DNA of 64,000 bases, taken from the IMG/VR virus record IMGVR_UViG_3300046787_000200, positions 62,001-126,000 of that record, one strand, 5' to 3'. Under the pieces are notes generated by a model. It made no database searches. It had not been told where the DNA came from and was given only the letters and a program-made list of their open reading frames with translations. Made by a program: the position numbers and the translations under genes. Shown piece by piece: positions 20,001-64,000 of the stretch (positions within the stretch are counted from its first letter, which is position 1; the number at the start of each line of letters is the position of its first letter).

Positions 20001-21312
20001 ATATTTGATAGACCATGGAAATGAGTTACCAAAAGACATTAAAGGACATAATTATACTACGGTCAAATATGAACGTAGTTACTTAAACACATTTAAGAAT
20101 TTAGTAAAGACTTTACCGGACAAGAAAGAACATTATATTTGGATATGCAGTAGCGTATGTGATTATGAAAACTTTGATTTTGGTTATATTTGTGATCCAT
20201 ATGCCAAAGATCAATTACATGTATTCCCAAGCGACAAACAAAAGTTTGGAGATACTTTCCTAATTGATGTAAATAAGTTACGCACATTAATTGATGATAT
20301 GATTATGTTGGAAGATTATGAGAAGGTCAACTATAATCAACATCAAAGGGCGAAACGTTTACCTGCCCCTATTATTATTACGAAAGAAGATACACATGTT
20401 AACGATATTCATACTGACTTTGATTGGCCTTACGCTACGTTTGTCACGGAAGACAATAAAGAAATACAAGTAACAGATGTAGAACCAATGAGTTTATGGA
20501 CACCTGATAGTAAAAATATTATTATTACTAGTACCGGTGCAACACGAATCATTGTACCTAAAGAAGCAAAAGATTATGTAGAGAATGAGTTGTATGATTA
20601 TCCATACATCAGCCGTAGTAAATCTCTAGTTAAATCTCAGCCACTGGATATAGTCTTCCTAAGCAACGGTGAAACTGGTGCTGACGAGAACTACGAACAT
20701 TTACTGAAAGTGACTACGGGATTAAAGAATAGAGTTGTGCGTGTAGATGGCGTTAATGGTCGTGTACAAGCCTATCATGCGGCAGCAGAAGCAAGTAACA
20801 CGCCATGGATGTTCACCGTGTTTGCTAAGTTACGTGTTGATGATAAATTTGATTGGTCATGGCAACCTGATAGACTACAAGTACCCAAGCATTATATCTT
20901 TAATGCAACAAACCCTGTCAATGGATTAGAGTATGGTCACCAAGCTATGATTGCTTATAACAAGAAGATTACATTAGCTAATACTGGTAGAGGGCTTGAC
21001 TTCACATTAGATGACGAACATGAAGTTGTTGAAATGAATAGCGGTATAGCTATGTACAATACAGATGCCTGGAGTACATGGCGTACTGCATTTAGAGAAG
21101 CACTAAAACTAAGAGCCGATACTAGCCAAGCAAGTAAAGATAGATTAGATGCATGGTTAAATAAAGGCGAAGGGAACTTTGCCCAATATAGTTGTGAAGG
21201 TGCGCAACATGCTATAGAATACTATGAATCAGTTAATGGTGATTTAGATAAATTACGTCTAAGTTATGATTGGCCTTGGTTGAAAGAGTATTTTAATAAT
21301 AAATACAATTGA
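17029..21312 (+). CDS. 1427-aa protein with internal tandem repeats and C-terminal glycosyltransferase(GT-A)-like domains
   Basis: About 10 FD(F/Y)SWxPDx4PYIYxFG repeats; C-terminal DIVFLSNGE...RVDGVNG...YHAAA...WRTAFRE. Confidence 0.75.
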   Translation: MLRDVFYFGDKPNVHPREKFAVDLADAKRQSTTEHFWIINEHCNYKDFDWDWDFDFLPDEDVWAEEHNNVWPSPYQKDSGTWLCNADNDEPLTIYRADVDPIPLKDEVTSNWKIIEYIEKDKFDFKWHPDPTDPPYIYVFGNEWYPGTIMPTVEYHVEGATERKYVTDQIAQLLPMPMLFNIIYEPAEFDYSWRPDPTAPPYIYVFGNNQYPASVMPTVEFHVEGATERKFIENIVPKLAARPAEFDVLEDIDQSSFDFSWVPDPTAPPYIYAWGNQWNKPEDKISVQYVAEGATEYKYMDARTKRKESMNNWNIPPNMFQNKFDFSWEPSPADLPFIYQFGTQWQKTHGPQYIVEGATEIKYVDVLKAEVVCTEFENWQVPRNIDQSKFDFSWHPDSTEEPYIYQFPDQWTRTGGPRYVVPGATEIKYIDVQTATAKHDKTHWVIPDDIDVSEFDFSWHPDIDHAPLIYQFGTQWQRTSGPKFYAVGCTEDSDIQYVDIIKAKALPNKELWQTLISVDNFDYSWHPDETEEPYIYVFGNQWNRAEVEPTLIYEMPGATHKKYINDIGIKASAYAEGWETIEDIESFDYSWRPDPGDPAYIYVFGNKQYDGTIMPTVKLHIKDATQEKFVDDIVATLAQRPDLFKNTELIKDFDYSWRPNPKDPPYVYQFGTQWAKTHGPQFIIPEAIETKFINYPVATILPDMTHWEIPENVDVTKFDFSWHPDGTAPAYIYQFGTLLDDKDGPRYITPDNDGIVVNLERKEIILEELIFPKYNIKTTLEDLINEHEGEIFWAINPELDYSNFDFKWVPDKQNVYHINAFGSKDNINTQTYFVNGKMWQKGYRDINYVEDKVIDVRTKIDMFFVDRGNSQSQERFNKLKAKFDNITKTRYLNSWVDTINRCITKSSTNLCWILNSELDYDDFEFDYYPSPWQMRMVHVFGTQWSHWGTTFMVNKHSFSEDTKYVKVIEHLSNLNFVKRKTAKATNCLYDIYLIDHGNELPKDIKGHNYTTVKYERSYLNTFKNLVKTLPDKKEHYIWICSSVCDYENFDFGYICDPYAKDQLHVFPSDKQKFGDTFLIDVNKLRTLIDDMIMLEDYEKVNYNQHQRAKRLPAPIIITKEDTHVNDIHTDFDWPYATFVTEDNKEIQVTDVEPMSLWTPDSKNIIITSTGATRIIVPKEAKDYVENELYDYPYISRSKSLVKSQPLDIVFLSNGETGADENYEHLLKVTTGLKNRVVRVDGVNGRVQAYHAAAEASNTPWMFTVFAKLRVDDKFDWSWQPDRLQVPKHYIFNATNPVNGLEYGHQAMIAYNKKITLANTGRGLDFTLDDEHEVVEMNSGIAMYNTDAWSTWRTAFREALKLRADTSQASKDRLDAWLNKGEGNFAQYSCEGAQHAIEYYESVNGDLDKLRLSYDWPWLKEYFNNKYN
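17395..19290 (+). repeat. Ten diverged ~60-70 aa protein repeats
   Basis: Recurrent FD(F/Y)SW(H/R)PD, P(Y/F)IY(V/Q)FG, GATE-x-K(Y/F); recurrent ttgattttagttgg at DNA level. Confidence 0.9.
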
Positions 21313-21648
21313 AGTTATTGCTGTATGAAGCAAAGAGAAAAGTGTCTTGGACGGGGGTGCGAATCCCCCCAGGTCCACCATAAAACACATTAAGCCTGGG
21401 TTGCCGGGTCAGTAGACATGCAGGGTTACCTTGCGTCACTTCTGAAAAATAGTGTGTTTTATGATGGGCCTGACCTAGATTCGACAGGGCAACAAGTAAA
21501 TTAGTGGACAGCTCGGCAACGCAGAAGCCGTCAGGGTTGGGGGTTCCCGACTATAGAAGCACAAAAGTAAACGCAAACGACTCACAGTTCGCATTAGCAG
21601 CCTAAACGCCGCTTAGGGTAAGACATACCTCGTAACAGAAAATCAGAT
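21311..21648 (+). ncRNA. ssrA: Circularly permuted (two-piece) tmRNA; tag peptide ANDSQFALAA
   Basis: Acceptor piece first (T-arm GGGGG-TGCGAAT-CCCCC, CAGGTCC-ACCA ending 21380), intervening segment 21381-21465, then 5' end GGGCCTG at 21466 (G3.U70 Ala identity), GATTCGAC, tag frame 21573-21605; outer ends approximate. Confidence 0.92.
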
Positions 21649-21649
21649 G

Positions 21650-21674
21650 GGGCACTTAGGTGCCCTTTTCTTTT
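21650..21674 (+). terminator. Intrinsic terminator after tmRNA
   Basis: GGGCAC-TTAG-GTGCCC followed by TTTTCTTTT. Confidence 0.85.
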
Positions 21675-21701
21675 GCTATCATACAAGTTGTGATATATAA
21701 T
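21673..21701 (+). promoter_or_regulatory. Sigma70-type promoter of the tRNA
   Basis: TTGCTA-17 nt-TATAAT ending 10 nt before the tRNA. Confidence 0.7.
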
Positions 21702-21711
21702 AGATACAAAT

Positions 21712-21786
21712 GCGATTGATACTCGGTGGACGAGAAGGAGCCTCTAAAACTCTGATTTGCGGGTTCGATTCCCGTCAATCGCACCA
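21712..21786 (+). tRNA. Amber suppressor tRNA (anticodon CTA at 21744-21746)
   Basis: Acceptor GCGATTG/CAATCGC + ACCA; D-stem CTCG/CGAG; anticodon arm GGAGC-CTCTAAA-ACTCT (one C.A mismatch); T-arm GCGGG-TTCGATT-CCCGT. Confidence 0.88.
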
Positions 21787-29305: not shown

Positions 29306-29727
29306 AGTATATAGGTACTAGTCTAGGTGGTTGTTTGAAAAGTCTCATGGCAGGTGAAGTGTCCATCGATGAGGTTATGTTCATTGTGACACGCACAATG
29401 TGCCCTACATTTGACAAATATATTGATGTAGTTAAGCAATACTATGCAGAAGGTAATCTATATGCACGTAAGCCATCGCAATATGATTTGAGTGAATCAT
29501 CACTGGATGATGTAATTGAGATGGCTAGTAGATTATATTATTTGGGTAAGATTCATCAGCCAAGAGTTTTTGTTGAAGAAGGTGGGTTTGGTGTTGCATA
29601 TCAGCATCCTACTGAATATGGTAATAGTTTGTGGATGCAAGTAGTACCCACTAATACTAACACTACACCTGCAGTAGTCGAAGCTTATGAAAAATATAAA
29701 TTGTTGGATGCGTTGACACGTGACTGA
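29302..29727 (+). CDS. Hypothetical protein
   Basis: ATGA-coupled ORF. Confidence 0.75.
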   Translation: MKYIGTSLGGCLKSLMAGEVSIDEVMFIVTRTMCPTFDKYIDVVKQYYAEGNLYARKPSQYDLSESSLDDVIEMASRLYYLGKIHQPRVFVEEGGFGVAYQHPTEYGNSLWMQVVPTNTNTTPAVVEAYEKYKLLDALTRD

Positions 29728-29965
29728 ATATAATATTGATCCCTACATTTGGTTTGCAAATAGAGAAGTAGAATTCTTACCTAAACATTTTGTATTATCT
29801 AATACCCCATTGTCAATGGATTCCAAGCAATGGGTTTTAGATAAACTAAAAGGTAGATTTTGCGTAGTTCAAACCACTGAGTTTTTTATAATAGATTATT
29901 GTTTGGGTAAGATTGCATTTGAAGATCCTTCTGAAGCAACTTTTTATGAATTAAAATGGTCATGA
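29720..29965 (+). CDS. Small protein of the 'F-x-L(K/R)W' C-terminus family
   Basis: Ends FEDPSEATFYELKWS like the array at 61-64 kb. Confidence 0.7.
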   Translation: MTEYNIDPYIWFANREVEFLPKHFVLSNTPLSMDSKQWVLDKLKGRFCVVQTTEFFIIDYCLGKIAFEDPSEATFYELKWS

Positions 29966-33204: not shown

Positions 33205-34100
33205 AACAATATAAAGAATTATTACAAGATATACTAGATAACGGAGAAATTAAAGATGATAGAACTGGTGTTGGCACTTATAGTGTTTTTGGACGTCATA
33301 TTCGCTTTGATTTGCGTAGGGGCTTTCCCGCAGTCACTACTAAGAAACTTGCTTGGAAAGCTTGCGTCGGTGAGCTTCTCTGGTTTATTGAAGGGTCTAG
33401 TGATGAACGTAGATTGGCAGAACTTACCCACGGTACAAGTGAAGGAAAGGTTACTATCTGGACCCCGAATGCACAGGCTCCGTACTGGAAGCCTAAAGCG
33501 AAATTCGAAGGTGATCTTGGCCGTGTATACGGAGTACAATGGCGCCATTGGAACAAAGATACGATTGAGAAAGACATGGGTCCGGCACACAAAGGTGGTA
33601 CACGCCTCGCAGTGGATCGGACGGAAGTCGACCAATTGGCAAATCTCATTAAAGGATTAACTGAAGATCCTAATGGGCGCAGACACATTCTAAGTGCCTG
33701 GAACGTGAGCGAGCTAGACCAAATGGCATTGCCCCCTTGTCACGTTATGAGTCAATTCTATGTTAACAAAAATAAAGAACTATCTTGCCATATGTATCAG
33801 CGTAGTGTTGATGTTTTCTTGGGCTTACCTTTTAACATTGCTTCTTACGCACTACTTACACATCTATTGGCACATCACTGTAATCTGAAAGTAGGTGAAC
33901 TTGTTATTAGTACAGGGGATACACATATCTACCAAGATCACATTGAACAAGTCAAAGAACAATTGCAACGTGAAACTTATCCATTGCCAACGTTAATGTT
34001 GAACGCATCAAAGACTAATATCTTTGAAATGACAATGGCTGATATACATTTGGAAAACTATGAAAGTCATGGACCAATTAAAGCAACTATGGCAGTCTGA
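33201..34100 (+). CDS. thyA: Thymidylate synthase
   Basis: DRTGVGT, ELLWF, YGVQWR, LPPCH, YQRSVDVFLGLPFNIASY, DTHIY. Confidence 0.97.
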   Translation: MKQYKELLQDILDNGEIKDDRTGVGTYSVFGRHIRFDLRRGFPAVTTKKLAWKACVGELLWFIEGSSDERRLAELTHGTSEGKVTIWTPNAQAPYWKPKAKFEGDLGRVYGVQWRHWNKDTIEKDMGPAHKGGTRLAVDRTEVDQLANLIKGLTEDPNGRRHILSAWNVSELDQMALPPCHVMSQFYVNKNKELSCHMYQRSVDVFLGLPFNIASYALLTHLLAHHCNLKVGELVISTGDTHIYQDHIEQVKEQLQRETYPLPTLMLNASKTNIFEMTMADIHLENYESHGPIKATMAV

Positions 34101-34353
34101 TGACGAAGCCAAAACAATCACTTACACAGTTAAAAAACTTAATGTAGGTGATGTTGAAGACCCTGATATTATTGTAGGACAATATATATGGGAGTGGCAA
34201 GAATCTGAAGCAGGTAAATGGATTATGGAAAACTCAAGACCTTTACCTAGTTGGCATCGTAGTATTAATCATGTAACATATGGTTATCAATATGATATCA
34301 GAGCATATCTTACACCTAAACAAATAACTTATTTTGAATTGAAATATAAATGA
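34060..34353 (+). CDS. Hypothetical protein
   Basis: GDVEDPD...GKWIMENS; ends YFELKYK. Confidence 0.7.
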   Translation: MKVMDQLKQLWQSDDEAKTITYTVKKLNVGDVEDPDIIVGQYIWEWQESEAGKWIMENSRPLPSWHRSINHVTYGYQYDIRAYLTPKQITYFELKYK

Positions 34354-56919: not shown

Positions 56920-57924
56920 ATGGATTTTAAGACACTTGAAGATGTAGGAACGTTTATGCTTGTCAATATACGACTAAGCAGGTATGACCTACAATTCGTT
57001 AATAACTTAACTAATATGATTGGTGTAAGAAATACAATTACTACTAATCAGGATAATCTCTTTAGACGGGTCGCATTAAAATATCGTAGGCAATTTACTC
57101 AACAAAAATTTGATATTGATACTTTACTATTATTACCTTGGACATGTAACGTAATAGAAAGTTCACCTCAATATACAAATGCATCTATCTCAATCATAGG
57201 GGATAAGATAATCTTTAGATCACCTTTCAATAAAAGCTTTTTAAACGCATTGAAAAAGAATCCAATCTATTCAATGGAATGGCATAAAGATAAACGTCAA
57301 TATGAAATCATATACGGTCCTACAACATTGAAAATGTTAATTACTTTAAGTGCGGATCACTTTGAAGTAATAGATTATTGCCCTATTACTAAAAATATTA
57401 TCAATAGTCTTAGCGAATTTGAAACAGTTAAATATTGGAAGCCGACACTTGTATGTAACAATGGTTACTTCTACATAGCCTCACTCAACGAAATATTATA
57501 CGAAACTATTAAAGATATTCCAGTAACCAACGATTTAACAATGGTTGCAGATTATGTTCAGTATGGAATTGAAGTAAGTGAATCTGTTATTGAGCACTTT
57601 TTTGATATAGAAAATCCAATGAAGATAACTCTTGCATGTAGTTATCGGGTTGAATGTGAAATTAGAGATTTAAATTCTGCTATTGAATGGTTACGTGAAC
57701 TTGGATGCGATAGTGTTACTACACATCTTTCAAAAAATACAACATTATCTAGTTTAGTGGAACAACACGATGTTGCTATGATTAAAGACCAATCAAACTT
57801 GCTATCATACAATAAACCTGTTATGATTCATTATAGGAATTATAGCTATATGGATCAGCCAGCCGGCTTATTTAAAATTATAAAATGCGTGAATTCAGAA
57901 CCCATCAATCTAGGAGATAAATGA
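56920..57924 (+). CDS. Hypothetical protein, possible HARP-like domain
   Basis: IIFRSPFNKSFLNALKK...WHKDKRQYEI; coupled to helicase gene. Confidence 0.65.
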   Translation: MDFKTLEDVGTFMLVNIRLSRYDLQFVNNLTNMIGVRNTITTNQDNLFRRVALKYRRQFTQQKFDIDTLLLLPWTCNVIESSPQYTNASISIIGDKIIFRSPFNKSFLNALKKNPIYSMEWHKDKRQYEIIYGPTTLKMLITLSADHFEVIDYCPITKNIINSLSEFETVKYWKPTLVCNNGYFYIASLNEILYETIKDIPVTNDLTMVADYVQYGIEVSESVIEHFFDIENPMKITLACSYRVECEIRDLNSAIEWLRELGCDSVTTHLSKNTTLSSLVEQHDVAMIKDQSNLLSYNKPVMIHYRNYSYMDQPAGLFKIIKCVNSEPINLGDK

Positions 57925-59372
57925 AACAATGTAAGATTATCGTTAAAGATGAAGTTAACGTCAAAATAGAAGGACTTGAGCTATCAGAGCGAAAAGCACT
58001 GATGAAACTTTTTGAGTATGAAGTTCCAGGTGCACGTTATTTACCTGCAGTCAGACTAGGTAGATGGAATGGTAAAGTAAGTTATTTTAGTTTAGGTGGT
58101 TCAAGTTACATTAACTTGTTACCTGAAATCATTCCTGTATTAGACAATGCAGGTTATGATATTGAACTAGAAGATACTAGAGATTATACAACTACATTTG
58201 AATTTGCTGAAGTGTCCGAGGCAACGTTTGCACATAAGAATTGGCCTAAAGGTCATCCTAAAGAAGGACAGCCGGTAGAACTACGTGACTATCAAATCAA
58301 TATTGTTAATAACTTCTTAAAGAATCCGCAATCACTACAAGAAATTGCAACTGGTGCAGGTAAAACATTAATGACAGCCGCACTGAGTTATAGTGTAGAG
58401 AACTATGGTCGTAGCATTGTTATTGTCCCGAACAAAAGTCTAGTAACACAAACTGAGGCTGACTATATTAATCTAGGATTAGATGTTGGTGTATACTTTG
58501 GTGATCGTAAAGAATACAATAAGACACATACTATTTGCACTTGGCAAAGCCTTAACAATATGCTTAAGAAAACAAAAGCAGGTGAAGCAGATATTATGGA
58601 CTTCATTGAAGGTGTAGTATGTGTAATGGTAGATGAAGTGCATATGGCTAAAGCTGATGCATTAAAAACATTGCTTACAAGTGTATTTGCTAAAGTTCCA
58701 ATTCGTTGGGGACTTACAGGAACTATCCCTAAAGCTAAATTTGAAGCTCAATCATTGTTTGTAAGTCTTGGTCCTGTTATCAGTAAGTTATCAGCAAGTG
58801 AACTACAAGATCAGGGTGTGTTGGCACAATGTCACGTAAACATTGTTCAATTAAAAGATGAAGTTGAATTCACTAATTATCAAAGTGAACTAAAACACTT
58901 ATTAGAAGATACTCATAGACTTGATGCTATCGCTGAATTGATATTAAAGATTAAAGAGAGTGGCAATGTATTGATTCTAGTTGATAGAGTGAATGCAGGT
59001 AAGGAACTGATTAGTAGATTACCGGATAGTGTGTTCGTTAGTGGTGCTACTAATATGACTGACAGGAAAGAAGAATATGATGAAGTTGCTACTAGCACGA
59101 ACAAAATTATTGTTGCGACTTATGGTGTTGCGGCTGTTGGCATTAACATACCTCGTATTTTTAATCTGGTTCTCATTGAACCTGGAAAATCCTTCGTCCG
59201 TGTTATCCAAAGTATCGGTCGAGGAATTCGTAAGGCAGAAGATAAAGACTTTGTTCAAATCTGGGATGTAACCAGCAGTTGTAAGTTTGCCAAACGACAC
59301 TTAACACAACGTAAGGCTTTTTACAAAGAAGCTAATTACCCGTTTGACTTAGAAAAGTTGACATACAGATAA
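57921..59372 (+). CDS. uvsW: Superfamily 2 helicase (UvsW-like)
   Basis: LRDYQ, ATGAGKT, DEVH, GLTGT, QSIGRGIR. Confidence 0.92.
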   Translation: MKQCKIIVKDEVNVKIEGLELSERKALMKLFEYEVPGARYLPAVRLGRWNGKVSYFSLGGSSYINLLPEIIPVLDNAGYDIELEDTRDYTTTFEFAEVSEATFAHKNWPKGHPKEGQPVELRDYQINIVNNFLKNPQSLQEIATGAGKTLMTAALSYSVENYGRSIVIVPNKSLVTQTEADYINLGLDVGVYFGDRKEYNKTHTICTWQSLNNMLKKTKAGEADIMDFIEGVVCVMVDEVHMAKADALKTLLTSVFAKVPIRWGLTGTIPKAKFEAQSLFVSLGPVISKLSASELQDQGVLAQCHVNIVQLKDEVEFTNYQSELKHLLEDTHRLDAIAELILKIKESGNVLILVDRVNAGKELISRLPDSVFVSGATNMTDRKEEYDEVATSTNKIIVATYGVAAVGINIPRIFNLVLIEPGKSFVRVIQSIGRGIRKAEDKDFVQIWDVTSSCKFAKRHLTQRKAFYKEANYPFDLEKLTYR

Positions 59373-59392
59373 GAAAGTGTTATAATACTATT

Positions 59393-60486: not shown

Positions 60487-61168
60487 TAAGCCAACTAAGT
60501 TTGGTTGTGAGTTTTGCAATAGAGAATTCATGCGTGAATCTACTATGGCTAAACACCTATGTGAAAATAAACAACGTTTTTTGAACAAAGACCTACAAGG
60601 TAATCGTATTGGATTTCAAGCTTGGCTACAATTTTACAAAAAAAACACATCAAGCAAAAAGAATAAAACATATGATGAGTTTATTCGTAGCGCATATTAT
60701 ACTGCTTTTGTAAAGTTTGGCACACATTGCGCTGATATCAATGCTATTAATATTAGCCGATATGTTGATTGGTTGTTGAAGAATCAAATACGTATTGATA
60801 CCTGGACTACTGATAGTGTTTACACAAAATACTTAATTGAATATCTACGTGTGGAAGATCCGTTAGATGCAATTGCACGTAGTGTCCAAACTACTATTGA
60901 TTTAGCAGAAATTGAAGGCATATTACCTAGAGATTATTTGCGTTACGGTAATACAAATAAGATATGTCATAATATTACTAATGGTAAACTTAGTCCTTGG
61001 ATGTTATATCAGAGTGACAGTGGTGTAAAGTTTTTAGATAATTTAAATGAATCACAAGTAAAATTGGTTATTGATTACATCAACCCAGAGTTATGGAAGA
61101 TCAAATTTAACCGTGAATCAGAAAATGTGAAACAAGTTAAGGAATTATTGAATGCAGGCGGGTACTAG
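60446..61168 (+). CDS. Zinc-finger-containing hypothetical protein
   Basis: CEFC-x12-HLC; TAG stop. Confidence 0.75.
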   Translation: MKISLNTKKTEATDKPTKFGCEFCNREFMRESTMAKHLCENKQRFLNKDLQGNRIGFQAWLQFYKKNTSSKKNKTYDEFIRSAYYTAFVKFGTHCADINAINISRYVDWLLKNQIRIDTWTTDSVYTKYLIEYLRVEDPLDAIARSVQTTIDLAEIEGILPRDYLRYGNTNKICHNITNGKLSPWMLYQSDSGVKFLDNLNESQVKLVIDYINPELWKIKFNRESENVKQVKELLNAGGY

Positions 61169-61349
61169 AGTTCGTATACCATGGCAAGCAAATCACGGCA
61201 TACCTACATGGAATGAAACATGTGCTTGGGCAATAGAACAGTTTGGATTATCTGGTGATAGATATGTTACAAACGCAACTGAAGATTATTTGGATTTCTA
61301 TTTTGTAGATGAGCGTGATGCTATCATCTTTGAGTTAGCACGGGGTTGA
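61152..61349 (+). CDS. Small 'LRW-family' protein
   Basis: CAWAIEQFG...FYFVDERDAIIFEL. Confidence 0.7.
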   Translation: MQAGTRVRIPWQANHGIPTWNETCAWAIEQFGLSGDRYVTNATEDYLDFYFVDERDAIIFELARG

Positions 61350-61350
61350 A

Positions 61351-61566
61351 GTGCAACAGGTAAAACTATATATTAATGTAACCAGAACATTAGAAATAGT
61401 ATACGAACTAAAGCAAATGGGTTGGATTATGGGTACAGACTTTGACTTTGCCTATTATAAGTCTGAATGGGATAGTTTTGGGCATGAACCTCCCAGTCAA
61501 CAATATACTATGTTTACCTTTTACAACGATAGTAATGCCAGTTACTTTACATTAAAGTGGGGATGA
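61351..61566 (+). CDS. Small 'LRW-family' protein
   Basis: Ends ASYFTLKWG. Confidence 0.7.
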   Translation: MQQVKLYINVTRTLEIVYELKQMGWIMGTDFDFAYYKSEWDSFGHEPPSQQYTMFTFYNDSNASYFTLKWG

Positions 61567-61579
61567 TGTATAATATACT

Positions 61580-62008
61580 ATGTTATACAGATTTATACAT
61601 AGGCTAAAAGCCCGTATTAGAAAATATCGGGCAGAACGAAAACTTGAAAAAAGTGGGTGTTCATCTTGGTATATGTACCGTCGTAAGTTTGATACTGCTT
61701 ATAATATTCGTGCTAATAAAATAAATGATTGTTATCACGGATACAAGTTTATTCATTCTATAACCGATCATAGTCATTATGCTTATCAGTTTCTTTACTA
61801 TTATGATTGGCACATACAACGATTTGGTTATGATGAGATGGTTGATTGGTGTAATGAAAATCTAAAACATAAACATCGTTTTGATTTTCATCGTGTGATT
61901 AACTATCAAGGTGGGTGGGAAATTAATGAACTTGGTGGTAGTGATTATTTGTTTGTTGCGTTCGAAGATGAGAAAGATTACATTCATTATATGTTGAGGT
62001 GGTCGTGA
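61580..62008 (+). CDS. 'LRW-family' protein
   Basis: DWCNEN...FEDEKDYIHYMLRWS; TTTACA-17-TATAAT 5 nt upstream. Confidence 0.75.
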   Translation: MLYRFIHRLKARIRKYRAERKLEKSGCSSWYMYRRKFDTAYNIRANKINDCYHGYKFIHSITDHSHYAYQFLYYYDWHIQRFGYDEMVDWCNENLKHKHRFDFHRVINYQGGWEINELGGSDYLFVAFEDEKDYIHYMLRWS

Positions 62009-62193
62009 AACTTACCCCCAAACACGGCTACGGGCCAAACTGCTATACTGTGGCTACAACTTCAGAATGGTATGACATTGTTATTTGGATGTTGGAAAAT
62101 GAAGTGGATCACTGGCATGTGTCTACTGGTCCCGAAGGCTATGGATTTCAAGTAAAATCAAAGGTTGAATGGTTTTTGTTGAGGTGGAGTTAA
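62005..62193 (+). CDS. Small 'LRW-family' protein
   Basis: GTG start after GAGGTGG; ends WFLLRWS. Confidence 0.7.
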   Translation: MKLTPKHGYGPNCYTVATTSEWYDIVIWMLENEVDHWHVSTGPEGYGFQVKSKVEWFLLRWS

Positions 62194-62429
62194 TGGATTT
62201 AGATACGGTAAAACGAATAGCATATAAGTGGTCCACTGAAAATAGTAATCTCAAACCAATGATTGGTGACGCAAGAGTTATTACCGGTGATTATATAGTT
62301 GACTCAAGGATATATCATTTTGAAAAAGCTAGTGGTATAGAATTAGATGTTTCCGGACTTAATCTCATAACAGGATATAAAATAGTTGATGAAGAAAAGT
62401 TTGCTTGGTGTGTATTGAGGTATAGTTGA
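62193..62429 (+). CDS. Small 'LRW-family' protein
   Basis: TAATG coupling; ends DEEKFAWCVLRYS. Confidence 0.7.
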   Translation: MDLDTVKRIAYKWSTENSNLKPMIGDARVITGDYIVDSRIYHFEKASGIELDVSGLNLITGYKIVDEEKFAWCVLRYS

Positions 62430-62746
62430 TGCGTAAATTCATACATCGTATCTGGTGGAAACTTATGCCTGGCACAATCATTAAAGTGAAATGGCCTAAA
62501 GGTAAGATTACAGTAGATCATAATGATTCGAGATGGTGTGATCTTGGTGGTGCAGTATGGATAGAGTTTGAAAGCGCGGATCCAAACGATCACTATCGTC
62601 CATGGATGGAAGCAAATGTAGGTCGTCAGAATTGGGATTGGAGTTGGGATATGCGAGACAATGATGTTGCTGAAAATGTATTGTCTATCAAGTTTCGTAA
62701 AGGTAAAGAACAATATGCTTCAATGGTGGCACTAAAATGGATGTAA
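62429..62746 (+). CDS. Small 'LRW-family' protein
   Basis: TGATG coupling; ends MVALKWM. Confidence 0.7.
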   Translation: MRKFIHRIWWKLMPGTIIKVKWPKGKITVDHNDSRWCDLGGAVWIEFESADPNDHYRPWMEANVGRQNWDWSWDMRDNDVAENVLSIKFRKGKEQYASMVALKWM

Positions 62747-62928
62747 AAGTGTTTAGTTTACCCGGTGGAATAGACGGCTGGGATCAAGTTGTAGAACGGA
62801 TTACTTGGTGTAGAGAACAGTTTGGTGAACGAACATTTGCAGGTCCTTGGGAATATAATGCAGTTAGTCATATGATTATTGTGCGTGAAGAAAAGAATAT
62901 TATGTTGTATATGTTGAGGTGGTTATGA
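62737..62928 (+). CDS. Small 'LRW-family' protein
   Basis: TWCREQFG...LYMLRWL. Confidence 0.7.
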   Translation: MDVKVFSLPGGIDGWDQVVERITWCREQFGERTFAGPWEYNAVSHMIIVREEKNIMLYMLRWL

Positions 62929-63137
62929 AAGAGTTTCCATACACTGTAACTACTAAGAAACTCAAGCACGAGGCCGAACAATGGTGCACCAAGAATATTG
63001 GGGAACGATGGTTTGCTGTGGGGAGAAAGACAGGCAATTGGACATGCTTTTGGGCAGGAAGAGATGATCCTAAAAGTTATCGCTGGCACTTTAAAAATGA
63101 AAAAGATGCTGTTATGTTTTCGTTGAGGTGGTTATGA
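62925..63137 (+). CDS. Small 'LRW-family' protein
   Basis: QWCTKNIG...FKNEKDAVMFSLRWL. Confidence 0.72.
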   Translation: MKEFPYTVTTKKLKHEAEQWCTKNIGERWFAVGRKTGNWTCFWAGRDDPKSYRWHFKNEKDAVMFSLRWL

Positions 63138-63340
63138 TAAAGAAACAATATCATAGGCATCCAACGTCAGTAGGTTATTTCAGTAACTTTATCAGAATGA
63201 ATGACCCCGAAGGTGTCATTGAAGATGAACTGAAGAAATACAATGCCTCAGTTGGTAAAAGCAAGAATAAAAACTATAAACTGAATGTTAAGTGGCACGA
63301 TGAAAAATTATATATGTTGTTTGTATTGAGGTATCAATGA
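63134..63340 (+). CDS. Small 'LRW-family' protein
   Basis: Ends DEKLYMLFVLRYQ. Confidence 0.7.
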   Translation: MIKKQYHRHPTSVGYFSNFIRMNDPEGVIEDELKKYNASVGKSKNKNYKLNVKWHDEKLYMLFVLRYQ

Positions 63341-63546
63341 GAGAACTAAAGAAAGAACTGTGGCCCCACAAGGTAGAGCTTGATTTGGATCAAAGTCAGC
63401 AAAAGATTGTGGAAATAGAAACTTGGCTGGGCGAACATTATGGTATTTATAAAGGTCGCTGGAATCAGGTCAACCATTATGACCATACTACATTTTATTT
63501 CCGTTCAGGCAGTGATGCTACTATGTTTAGTTTGAGGTGGCAATGA
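63337..63546 (+). CDS. Small 'LRW-family' protein
   Basis: TWLGEHYG...DATMFSLRWQ. Confidence 0.72.
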   Translation: MRELKKELWPHKVELDLDQSQQKIVEIETWLGEHYGIYKGRWNQVNHYDHTTFYFRSGSDATMFSLRWQ

Positions 63547-63794
63547 CTATTACTAGTTCAATGTTACAACATCTTAATGTTAAGGTACCAAAGTTATACA
63601 AAGTTGTATATGCTAAAACAATAGACGGCGTTCAAGCACAATGGCAAGTAAGTTATAAAGATTATATTGTAAATGAATGGCTTAAGGAAAACTGCGAATA
63701 TCCTTACTATCATAGTCCCGGATATCTTACAGAAAAGTTTATTGAGTTTACAGATGAAAAAGAAGCGTTGTGGTTTAGTTTGAGGTTTGAATGA
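63543..63794 (+). CDS. Small 'LRW-family' protein
   Basis: EWLKENC...DEKEALWFSLRFE. Confidence 0.72.
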   Translation: MTITSSMLQHLNVKVPKLYKVVYAKTIDGVQAQWQVSYKDYIVNEWLKENCEYPYYHSPGYLTEKFIEFTDEKEALWFSLRFE

Positions 63795-64000
63795 TAGTAA
63801 GTGAAGGTAAAATATTCGGTGAAAGATACTATACAGTTGATCCTGAGTTGGTTGACTTCAATGACTTTGATCCAAACTTTTTTCATCAATCCTGGCACGA
63901 TATAGAAATATGGTGTATCAAAACATTTGGATGCACCCCTGCAAATGGTGTTTGGGAACCTCACGGTAGATGGTATATGAACAATAGTAAGTTTTGGTTC
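63791..64000 (+). CDS. Small 'LRW-family' protein, 3' truncated
   Basis: ATGA coupling; MIVSEGK...IWCIKTFG...RWYMNNSKFWF runs off the window. Confidence 0.65.
   Translation, partial: MIVSEGKIFGERYYTVDPELVDFNDFDPNFFHQSWHDIEIWCIKTFGCTPANGVWEPHGRWYMNNSKFWF

What the first reader, a model, noticed from the sequence alone, without database searches (positions are those of the whole stretch)
61152..64000. Array of small paralogous genes whose C-terminal LRW codons encode the next gene's SD
Seen: at least 12 consecutive small ORFs (about 60-140 aa), many with W(C/L)xxx(F/Y/I)G and ending F-x-(D/N)EKDA-x-x-F-x-L(R/K)(W/Y/F). At eight junctions the DNA is TTGAGGT(GG/AT/TT) followed within a few nt by an overlapping stop/start, so Leu-Arg(AGG)-Trp doubles as the GAGGT Shine-Dalgarno. 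A dispersed member lies at 29720 and possibly 34060. Inference: a self-coupling cassette array in which the conserved junction guarantees translation and offers microhomology for shuffling a hypervariable family, such as anti-defence or host-interaction proteins.
Basis: partly seen in the sequence, partly recalled or inferred. Interest (0 to 1): 0.7.

Follow-up and report, generated by a model that had tools for sequence, protein, structure and literature searches.

The report
Phage gene cassettes carrying next gene's ribosome site
A freshwater jumbo phage carries about 20 back-to-back copies of a small, previously undescribed protein domain whose last codons (Leu-Arg-Trp, written TTG-AGG-TGG) also form the ribosome-binding site of the next gene, and the number and order of these cassettes differ among related phages.

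Summary
The window's last 2.85 kb begins an array of 22 tightly packed + strand genes, equivalent to window 61152-66471 and so running past the window end. Twenty of them share a small domain with no Pfam, PHROG or PDB match. AlphaFold2 predicts a beta-alpha-beta-beta-alpha fold (pLDDT 90).

Eleven junctions read TTG AGG T.. nnn TGA/TAA, with the next start codon overlapping the stop.
- AGG is 4% of Arg codons genome-wide. It is 12 of 14 at this Arg and 2 of 30 at other Arg positions in the same genes.
- In relatives, AGG is commoner when an overlapping start follows (56% vs 21%).
- In a distant phage, Phosso (37 profile matches), this Arg is not conserved.

The codon choice therefore looks selected as a Shine-Dalgarno site (GAGGTG, 5 nt before ATG).

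In 54 related metagenomic contigs that carry at least one profile match, the flanking genes are constant. The array varies from 1 to 11 profile matches in different order, and two further contigs have none. Twelve clean cassette gain/loss breakpoints map within -15..+4 nt of the stop codon.

The proteins' function is unknown. An early, fast-evolving accessory role is inferred. This is a new variant of known principles: translational coupling and modular shuffling in T4-type phages.

The parts
59358..59386 (+). Perfect sigma-70-type promoter (TTGACA-17-TATAAT, with TG before the -10), 1.8 kb upstream of the array on the same strand. It is the likely start of the early transcription unit that runs into the array.
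   Evidence: 12 of 12 match at L001:1358-1386. One search finds 27 perfect matches in the genome, against about 0.7 expected from base composition (my arithmetic). A relaxed form is present at the same place in 31 of 78 relatives.
61152..61349 (+). Cassette 1 (65 aa, OG5). It is the first array member in most relatives that have an array. Its tail is F-E-L-A-R-G, with no LRW.
   Evidence: HMM E 5.6e-13; synteny.
61351..61566 (+). Cassette 2 (71 aa, GTG start). Its tail is TLKWG (TTA AAG TGG). It is followed by the only intergenic gap of the array in the window (13 nt), which holds an 11 of 12 promoter-like match.
61580..62008 (+). Cassette 3 (142 aa, long N-terminal extension). Its tail is MLRWS, with TTG AGG TGG TCG TGA.
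62005..62193 (+). Cassette 4 (62 aa, GTG start in a GTGA overlap). Its tail is LLRWS TAA.
62193..62429 (+). Cassette 5 (78 aa, TAATG overlap). Its tail is VLRYS. It is a divergent member.
   Evidence: HMM E 0.004; junction.
62429..62746 (+). Cassette 6 (105 aa, TGATG overlap). It is below the HMM threshold but carries the W-M-E-A-N-V-G and ..V-A-L-K-W-M motifs. CTA AAA TGG here creates the next gene's ATG.
   Evidence: Direct reading. Membership is by motif only.
62737..62928 (+). Cassette 7 (63 aa). Its tail is MLRWL, with TTG AGG TGG TTA TGA.
62925..63137 (+). Cassette 8 (70 aa). Its tail is SLRWL.
63134..63340 (+). Cassette 9 (68 aa). Its tail is VLRYQ.
63337..63546 (+). Cassette 10 (69 aa). 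Its tail is SLRWQ. This is the member that was modelled.
   Evidence: AlphaFold2 pLDDT 89.7, E11-15 H21-35 E42-46 E51-55 H58-68.
63543..63794 (+). Cassette 11 (83 aa). Its tail is SLRFE.
63791..64000 (+). Cassette 12 (84 aa; ends at window-equivalent 64045). Ten further ORFs follow outside the window, to window-equivalent 66471.
61994..62008 (+). Junction element TTGAGGTGG-nn-(A/G)TGA. This is the first of eight in the window. The TTGAGGT motifs of the others start at 62179, 62415, 62914, 63123, 63326, 63532 and 63780. GAGGTG pairs with the 16S rRNA 3' tail, with a 5-nt spacer to the start.
   Evidence: (duplex dG -6.3 to -8.5 kcal/mol).
29720..29965 (+). Dispersed family member (81 aa, tail ELKWS, TTA AAA TGG TCA TGA).
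   Evidence: HMM E 2.4e-5.
34060..34353 (+). Dispersed family member (97 aa, tail ELKYK).
   Evidence: HMM E 3e-7.

Best explanation
The region is a polycistronic, probably early, array of about 20 paralogous cassettes. Each encodes a small beta-alpha-beta-beta-alpha domain of a large family that has not been described before.

The last helix of the domain ends F-x-L-R-W-x-stop. In this phage lineage the Leu-Arg-Trp codons are locked to TTG-AGG-TGG. The mRNA therefore reads GAGGUGG, which gives 6-7 base pairs with the 16S rRNA 3' tail. This lies five bases before an AUG that overlaps the stop codon (AUGA). Every cassette thus carries at its own 3' end the ribosome-binding site of whatever gene follows. 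A ribosome finishing one cassette is placed to start the next, by termination-reinitiation or by fresh initiation at an exposed Shine-Dalgarno site.

Because the ribosome-binding site and the start/stop overlap sit in the conserved tail, cassettes can be added, lost or reordered at the junction without losing expression. That turnover is what related phages show.

Shown: paralogy, the predicted fold, the codon lock and its link to an overlapping start, variable content and order, and breakpoints at the junction.

Inferred: actual coupling of translation, a causal role of the roughly 10-nt junction homology in recombination, early timing, and an accessory host-takeover or counter-defence role for the proteins.
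For: Paralogy:
- The family HMM hits 23 ORFs in the genome, 19 of them consecutive in the array.
- A profile search finds 1474 clusters at E<=1e-3 among 1.8 billion representatives. The listed hits are small proteins (57-147 aa), mostly with the domain at the extreme C-terminus. Of 152 sequences (150 hits plus two close homologues), 102 end LRW plus one residue.

Fold:
- AlphaFold2 gives pLDDT 89.7 and pTM 0.77.
- Structural neighbours are only uncharacterised phage proteins.

Codon lock:
- Genome-wide, AGG is 4.1% of Arg codons and TTG is 21.8% of Leu codons.
- At the tail, AGG is 12 of 14, against 2 of 30 other Arg codons in the same domains (Fisher 3.5e-7). TTG is 13 of 14, against 9 of 44.
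- In 148 tails from relatives, AGG is 69 of 148, against 35 of 447 elsewhere (1e-23). CGT is 2 of 148, against 144 of 447.
- AGG is 63 of 113 when an overlapping start follows and 6 of 28 when none does (p=0.0014).
- Exactly one residue follows the aromatic residue in 170 of 178 tails, and 106 have an ATGA overlap.

Shine-Dalgarno quality:
- The genome's own starts use AAGGA/AGGAG with 5-8 nt spacers. By my alignment to the AGGAGG core, GAGG plus 5 nt is the equivalent register.
- Duplex dG is <=-6 kcal/mol at 12 of 20 array junctions. The figure is 4% for random sites and 13-18% for other overlapping pairs.

Lineage specificity:
- In Sinorhizobium phage Phosso the same domain gives 37 matches. 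Its tail is F-K-L-[R/T/A/S/V]-[W/F]-x, with mixed CGC/CGT/AGG codons and frequent intergenic spacers.
- The Arg is therefore not required by the fold.

Modularity:
- The backbone helicase-1-3-4-[array]-12-7-13-15 is conserved. The array ranges from 0 members (L055, L072) to 11 profile matches in relatives, against about 20 here, with different content and order. Orthology was checked.
- Twelve non-redundant indels have crossover intervals within -15..+4 nt of the stop. Their microhomologies include ATTGAGGTGG and TGGTCATGAG.

Operon:
- There is a perfect sigma-70 promoter upstream. Promoter-like and terminator-like sites across the 12-kb locus around the array are no commoner than in shuffled sequence.

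Background:
- Intragenic Shine-Dalgarno motifs at 4-nt overlaps promote termination-reinitiation in E. coli (PMC6728339).
Against: - There is no direct expression or coupling data. The RNA-labelled runs hold only a few contigs of relatives and could be DNA.
- Eight of 20 junctions have weak Shine-Dalgarno sites (AGA, AAA, ATA or GTA before TGG). The lock is therefore not obligatory. In six of those eight the xxA-TGG sequence instead creates an in-frame upstream ATG whose use is unknown.
- The predicted accessibility of the Shine-Dalgarno hexamer is no different from controls (0.35 vs 0.46 +/- 0.25). Coupling and independent initiation cannot be told apart.
- Counts from relatives are not phylogenetically independent.
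- Breakpoints at gene ends are also what selection for intact genes would leave.
- The proteins' function is entirely inferred.
Confidence: 0.7

Rival explanations
1. The nucleotide identity of the junctions is a by-product of recent tandem duplication plus protein-level conservation of L-R-W. Its resemblance to a Shine-Dalgarno site is incidental.
For: The family is a tandem array, so common descent is certain. L and the aromatic residue are nearly invariant core residues of the last helix.
Against: - Paralogues are only 14-33% identical.
- Other conserved positions use several synonymous codons. For example, the Ala of the D-A motif uses GCT, GCA and GCC.
- Other Arg and Leu codons of the same genes follow genome usage.
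- AGG use depends on whether an overlapping start follows.
- The Arg is not conserved in Phosso.
Confidence: 0.07
2. The conserved 3' element (about 50 nt, with the core TTGAGGTGGnnATGA) is selected mainly as a recombination junction that lets cassettes be exchanged between co-infecting phages. Ribosome binding is secondary.
For: - The array's content and order vary among relatives.
- Crossover intervals lie in the junction, with up to 10 nt of microhomology.
- There is a 13-copy repeat family at cassette ends.
- PeSL motifs in T4-type phages are a precedent for repeat-mediated modular shuffling (PMC2839356, PMC4122927).
Against: - Ten nucleotides is short for homologous recombination.
- A recombination signal would not need AGG specifically, the exact 5-nt spacing to ATG, or the dependence of AGG on an overlapping start.
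- Survivorship bias explains breakpoints at gene ends.
Confidence: 0.15
3. The Shine-Dalgarno-like element next to a rare AGG codon and a stop acts as a programmed pause or frameshift site, as in prfB. It would make fused two-cassette proteins.
For: - The geometry is similar to the RF2 site, where a Shine-Dalgarno-like element lies 3 nt before the last sense codon and UGA (my own knowledge).
- Natural two-domain fusions exist in metagenomes, for example P0025, P0030 and P0004.
Against: - The last sense codon is variable (CAA, AGT, GAA, TTA and others) and offers no slippery re-pairing.
- A -1 shift would need an X-XXY-YYZ heptamer, which is absent.
- The fusions are explained by simple loss of the stop.
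Confidence: 0.03

Closest known systems
Translational coupling by termination-reinitiation at 4-nt or 1-nt gene overlaps with an intragenic Shine-Dalgarno motif (Huber et al. 2019, PMC6728339)
   Same: Co-directional ATGA and TAATG overlaps, with a Shine-Dalgarno motif inside the upstream gene at initiation distance.
   Different: Here the Shine-Dalgarno site is written into three conserved residues of a protein-family signature and is repeated at 11 successive junctions of paralogues. The family motif and the ribosome-binding site are therefore one element that travels with the cassette. Coupling itself has not been tested.
PeSL (promoter-early stem-loop) mobile regulatory cassettes in the hyperplastic regions of T4-type phages (Arbiol et al. 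2010, PMC2839356; Comeau et al. 2014, PMC4122927)
   Same: A plastic block of small accessory genes lies between conserved core genes of a T4-superfamily phage. Repeated short motifs sit at gene borders, and indel endpoints coincide with those motifs.
   Different: PeSLs are intergenic promoter-plus-terminator motifs, so each ORF has its own transcription signals. Here there is no intergenic space. The repeat is coding sequence plus a translation signal, and the shuffled genes are paralogues of one family.
Codon-usage distortion at gene 3' ends caused by the downstream gene's Shine-Dalgarno site (Eyre-Walker 1996, J Mol Evol; cited from my own knowledge, not retrieved)
   Same: Synonymous codon choice near a stop is set by the next gene's ribosome-binding site.
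   Different: Here the effect appears to reach the amino-acid level (Arg is kept in this lineage but not in Phosso) and is family-wide.
Ferredoxin-like / ACT-like alpha+beta sandwiches (best match 5v0s_B, the ACT domain of TyrA, Z 6.7)
   Same: A three-stranded sheet is packed by two helices in the order beta-alpha-beta-beta-alpha.
   Different: The fourth strand is lacking. Z is below the level the tool itself calls typical for chance (7-8), there is no sequence similarity, and there are no ligand-binding motifs.

Membership tests
Termination-reinitiation coupled overlapping gene pairs | Co-directional genes with a 4-nt (ATGA/GTGA) or 1-nt (TAATG/TGATG) stop/start overlap | tested here: met
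   Sixteen of 20 array junctions. In relatives, 113 of 141 L-R-aromatic-x tails are followed by such an overlap.
Termination-reinitiation coupled overlapping gene pairs | A Shine-Dalgarno motif inside the upstream gene at initiation distance | tested here: met
   GAGG(T) lies 5 nt before ATG at ATGA-type overlaps, and 8 nt before it at TAATG/TGATG-type overlaps (my count). This occurs at 11 junctions, with dG -6.3 to -8.5 kcal/mol. The register equals the genome's own AGGA plus 6-7 nt.
Termination-reinitiation coupled overlapping gene pairs | Downstream translation depends on upstream translation | not testable with these tools
   This needs a reporter with a premature stop in the upstream gene. 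The structure prediction was uninformative.
PeSL mobile regulatory cassettes | An intergenic early promoter plus a stem-loop/terminator flanking each shuffled ORF | tested here: not met
   Genes overlap. Promoter-like and terminator-like sites are not above shuffled expectation (56 vs 54.7; 5 vs 5.1).
PeSL mobile regulatory cassettes | Indel or replacement endpoints coincide with the repeated motif, in a plastic region between core genes | tested here: met
Any Pfam, PHROG or PDB-represented protein family | A significant profile or sequence match | tested here: not met
   - Pfam: none for 10 members, and none shared across 102 members.
- PHROGs: none.
- PDB profile search: best E 0.35.
- Foldseek against PDB: best E 0.27.
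RF2-type Shine-Dalgarno-stimulated frameshift site | A slippery last sense codon before the stop that can re-pair in the new frame | tested here: not met
   The last codon is variable and not slippery.
ACT / ferredoxin-like fold | A beta-alpha-beta-beta-alpha-beta topology with a clear structural match | tested here: inconclusive
   The model has beta-alpha-beta-beta-alpha only. The best Z is 6.7, within the tool's chance range.

The most novel reading that the evidence does not exclude
The conserved tail of this domain family has been recruited as a portable 'translation plus recombination' junction. This would make the array a plug-and-play cassette system without an integrase. Jumbo phages would use it to gain, lose and reorder diversified small binder proteins, for example counter-defence or host-takeover factors, while every newcomer is expressed automatically. 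The ribosome-binding site would then be dictating a conserved amino acid (Arg) in a protein family.
Probability: 0.25. Interest if true: 0.8.

Novelty: new variant of a known kind. Interest (0 to 1): 0.55.

Why it matters
First, it defines a large small-protein domain family that has not been annotated. The family has more than 1,400 clusters at 50% identity in metagenomes, about 23 copies in this phage and 37 profile matches in Sinorhizobium phage Phosso. It has a confident predicted fold and no known function. It is a concrete target for counter-defence and host-takeover screens in jumbo phages.

Second, it is an unusually clean natural example of dual coding. A translation signal fixes both codon choice and, apparently, the amino acid at a family-signature position. 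It is repeated at successive junctions, with an internal control (other Arg codons in the same genes) and an outgroup control (Phosso).

Third, it suggests a way other than PeSLs for T4-superfamily phages to keep shuffled accessory genes expressed. The ribosome-binding site travels in the upstream cassette.

Practically, it warns gene callers about start-codon choice in such arrays, because GTG inside AGGTGG competes with the ATGA start. It also offers a compact design for synthetic polycistrons.

Tried and rejected
- Megablast of the region and tblastn of one member against GenBank phages gave no match.
- A word-based homologue search found only 2 near-identical proteins. The exhaustive profile search was needed.
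- The search for related loci with the family alignment failed because no stretch was conserved enough. I used the neighbouring helicase instead.
- Pfam, PHROGs, a PDB sequence search, Foldseek against PDB, VIA-align, AFDB clusters and the ESM Atlas returned nothing with a known function.
- My first automatic comparison of Shine-Dalgarno strength used a greedy gene set that dropped most family genes, so n was 5. I redid it with curated junctions.
- Reads: two RNA-labelled runs hold contigs of relatives that span cassette borders, and one contig ends in letters that I recognise as a SMART-type cDNA adaptor. DNA carry-over cannot be excluded, so I do not count this as proof of transcription.
- The predicted accessibility of the Shine-Dalgarno hexamer did not differ from controls.
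- I rejected the frameshift reading because there is no slippery codon.
- Charge and pI show no common trend: median pI is 5.6, with a range of 4.3-9.7. A DNA-mimic reading therefore has no support.
- Longer homologues carry no informative fused domains.


Full report
**Where the window lies**

The window is bases 62001-126000 of a single 352,012-bp IMG/VR virus record. CheckV rates it 100% complete, and its GC content is 36.6%. Runs holding the sequence are freshwater and estuary metagenomes.

A UvsW/RadD-type helicase lies just upstream of the finding, at window 57921-59372. It is 50-55% identical to the helicases of the jumbo phages Phosso, Atu_ph07, PA5oct and PBECO4. This is therefore an uncultivated jumbo phage related to that group. 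No GenBank phage is close at the DNA level.

From window 61152 onward the + strand carries tightly packed small genes. The series runs past the window end to genome 128471, which is window-equivalent 66471. It holds 22 ORFs.

An HMM built from the array hits 23 ORFs in the genome at E<=0.01.
- Nineteen are consecutive in the array.
- Two lie elsewhere, at genome 259341 and 263833.
- One more array ORF (window 62429-62746) is a member by motif only.

The shared pattern is W-C-x-E-N-x-G ... W ... F-x-F-x-x-E-K-D-A-x-x-F-x-L-(R/K)-(W/Y/F)-x-stop.

TTGAGGT occurs eight times on the + strand between 61994 and 63786, each time at a gene junction. Three more junctions beyond the window have it. The repeat finder independently reports a 13-copy, 50-nt repeat at cassette 3' ends. 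Nucleotide information content peaks on TTGAGGTGG and on the stop.

**Is the Leu-Arg-Trp tail also a Shine-Dalgarno site?**

Geometry. The junctions read TTG AGG TGG nnA TGA. GAGGUG is complementary to the 16S rRNA 3' tail, and GAGG ends 5 nt before the AUG that overlaps the stop. The phage's long genes use AAGGA/AGGAG with 5-8 nt spacers. By my alignment to the AGGAGG core, this is the same register.

Strength. The predicted duplex energy is <=-6 kcal/mol at 12 of 20 array junctions. The figure is 4% for random positions and 13-18% for other overlapping gene pairs of the genome.

Codon test.
- AGG is 4.1% of Arg codons and TTG is 21.8% of Leu codons in 285 long ORFs.
- At the tail, AGG is 12 of 14 while other Arg codons in the same domains are AGG 2 of 30 (Fisher 3.5e-7). 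TTG is 13 of 14 against 9 of 44.
- In 148 non-identical tails from related contigs, AGG is 69 of 148 against 35 of 447 elsewhere (1e-23). The genome's favourite Arg codon, CGT, falls to 2 of 148.
- AGG is used in 63 of 113 tails followed by an overlapping start, but in only 6 of 28 tails without one (p=0.0014).

Outgroup. Sinorhizobium phage Phosso gives 37 matches to the same profile. Its tails read F-K-L-[R/T/A/S/V]-[W/F]-x, Arg codons are mixed, and many genes have spacers after them. The fold therefore does not need this Arg.

Taken together, in the freshwater lineage both the residue and its codon look fixed by the translation signal. These results fit a selected Shine-Dalgarno site and do not fit mere shared descent, since the paralogues are only 14-33% identical.

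Limits.
- Eight of 20 junctions are weak (AGA, AAA, AAG, ATA or GTA before TGG, or AAA before TTC). Six of them read xxA-TGG, which instead creates an in-frame ATG two codons upstream of the overlap start. Its use is unknown.
- Coupling versus independent initiation cannot be decided from predicted RNA structure.
- No convincing RNA data exist.

**The protein**

An alignment of 102 family sequences gives a confident AlphaFold2 model for window 63337-63543, with pLDDT 89.7 and pTM 0.77. Its elements are strand 11-15, helix 21-35, strands 42-46 and 51-55, and helix 58-68.

Structural neighbours of any significance are only uncharacterised proteins of uncultured phages, one Atu_ph07 protein and unnamed bacterial proteins. 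PDB searches give only generic alpha+beta matches. Foldseek's best E-value is 0.27. VIA-align gives Z <= 6.7, which is inside the tool's stated chance range. There is no Pfam, PHROG or PDB sequence match.

The exhaustive profile search finds 1474 clusters at E<=1e-3. The best 150 listed are small proteins (57-147 aa), mostly with the domain ending at the last or second-last residue. PA5oct has three matches, Atu_ph07 has one and PBECO4 has none. The PA5oct genes are 'hypothetical' and lack the virion mass-spectrometry mark that their neighbours carry.

Members have no common charge and no informative fusions.

**Turnover in relatives**

Eighty IMG/VR loci were fetched through the helicase, at 73-97% identity. 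They share the backbone helicase-OG1-OG3-OG4 ... OG12-OG7-OG13-OG15-OG18-OG20. Between OG4 and OG12 the family content varies.
- Two contigs have none (L055, L072).
- Fifty-four contigs have 1 to 11 profile matches.
- This genome has about 20.

The membership differs and so does the order. For example, OG8-OG14 here and in L017 is OG14-OG8 in L041. OG14-OG6-OG8 occurs in L029. Each of these members matches only one partner in the other locus.

Array genes are also less conserved than the backbone. Their identity relative to the helicase is 0.52-0.92, against 0.78-1.07 for backbone genes. Four family cassettes, plus one divergent array ORF that missed the profile threshold in that analysis, have no orthologue at 45% identity or more in any locus.

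In the 12 non-redundant cases where both flanks of a cassette indel are at least 80% identical, the crossover interval lies between -15 and +4 nt of the upstream stop. The microhomologies include ATTGAGGTGG, TGGTCATGAG and ATGA. An independent metagenomic contig (L083) shows 15 overlapping small genes. Nine match the family profile, and six of those nine use TTG AGG.

**Transcription context**

A perfect TTGACA-17-TATAAT promoter with an upstream TG lies at window 59358-59386. The genome has 27 such perfect sites, against about 0.7 expected from base composition (my arithmetic). The phage therefore evidently uses host sigma-70 promoters.

Across the 12-kb locus that contains the array, promoter-like and terminator-like matches are no commoner than in shuffled sequence. 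I infer, but have not shown, that the array is part of an early polycistronic unit.

**Interpretation**

The best-supported reading is a modular array in which each cassette's conserved C-terminal codons double as the ribosome-binding site for the next gene. Cassettes can then be inserted, deleted or reordered at the junction and still be translated.

The principle of an intragenic Shine-Dalgarno site at 4-nt overlaps is known (PMC6728339). Repeat-bordered modular shuffling in T4-type phages is also known as PeSLs (PMC2839356, PMC4122927). This system fails the defining PeSL feature, because it has no intergenic promoter/terminator motif. It differs from ordinary coupled pairs in that the signal is part of a protein-family signature repeated along an array of paralogues.

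I therefore rate it a new variant of a known kind, carried by a protein family that has not been described. The proteins' role as early accessory, host-takeover or counter-defence factors rests only on context, copy-number expansion and fast turnover. It should be treated as a hypothesis, with a probability of about 0.25.

Noticed in passing
window 21279-21786: A phage-encoded tmRNA of the betaproteobacterial two-piece (permuted) type (RF01850, 106 bits; tag peptide ANDSQFALAA). It is followed 16 nt later by a tRNA with anticodon CUA, which looks like an amber suppressor. The tmRNA type hints at a betaproteobacterial host.
   Followed up: partly
genome 300450-315120 (outside the window, - strand): A cluster of 34 tRNA genes. 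The tRNA-Arg genes have anticodons UCU, UCG and ACG but not CCU, so the AGG codons at the junctions depend on wobble by tRNA-Arg(UCU) or on a host tRNA.
   Followed up: no
window 25468, 27278, 55320, 55559, 59358 (and 22 more in the genome): There are 27 perfect TTGACA-N16-18-TATAAT sites in the genome, against about 0.7 expected. Twenty-one are on the + strand. They look like a set of host sigma-70 (early) promoters.
   Followed up: partly
L087:822-1190 (Sinorhizobium phage Phosso PV764938.1 2821-3189): In Phosso a tRNA-Arg(CCU) gene lies directly upstream of a family member. Phosso holds 37 matches to the family profile, in at least eight clusters around its genome.
   Followed up: no
P0025, P0030, P0004 (metagenomic proteins): Natural two-domain proteins in which two cassettes are fused. 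In P0030 the sequence continues past LRWS with a Cys where the stop codon would be expected. Junction stops can therefore be lost to give tandem-domain proteins.
   Followed up: no
window 61546-61574: An 11 of 12 promoter-like match (TTTACA-17-TATAAT) fills the only intergenic gap of the array within the window. It ends 5 nt before the ATG of cassette 3. It could be an internal promoter giving a nearly leaderless mRNA.
   Followed up: no
window 61364-62020 (run X20, record 13): A 690-nt contig from an RNA-labelled library spans the border of cassettes 2 and 3. It ends in letters that I recognise as a SMART-type cDNA adaptor. This is possible evidence of a polycistronic transcript in a close relative, but the run's RNA label is only a guess.
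   Followed up: partly
genome 129078-129641 (window-equivalent 67078-67641) and L083:3956-4498: A small exonuclease gene follows the block of small genes in this genome. In the independent contig L083 a gene with an Rv2179c-like Pfam hit sits in the same position. I did not test whether the two are homologous. If they are, the gene could serve as a second anchor for finding more arrays.
   Followed up: no
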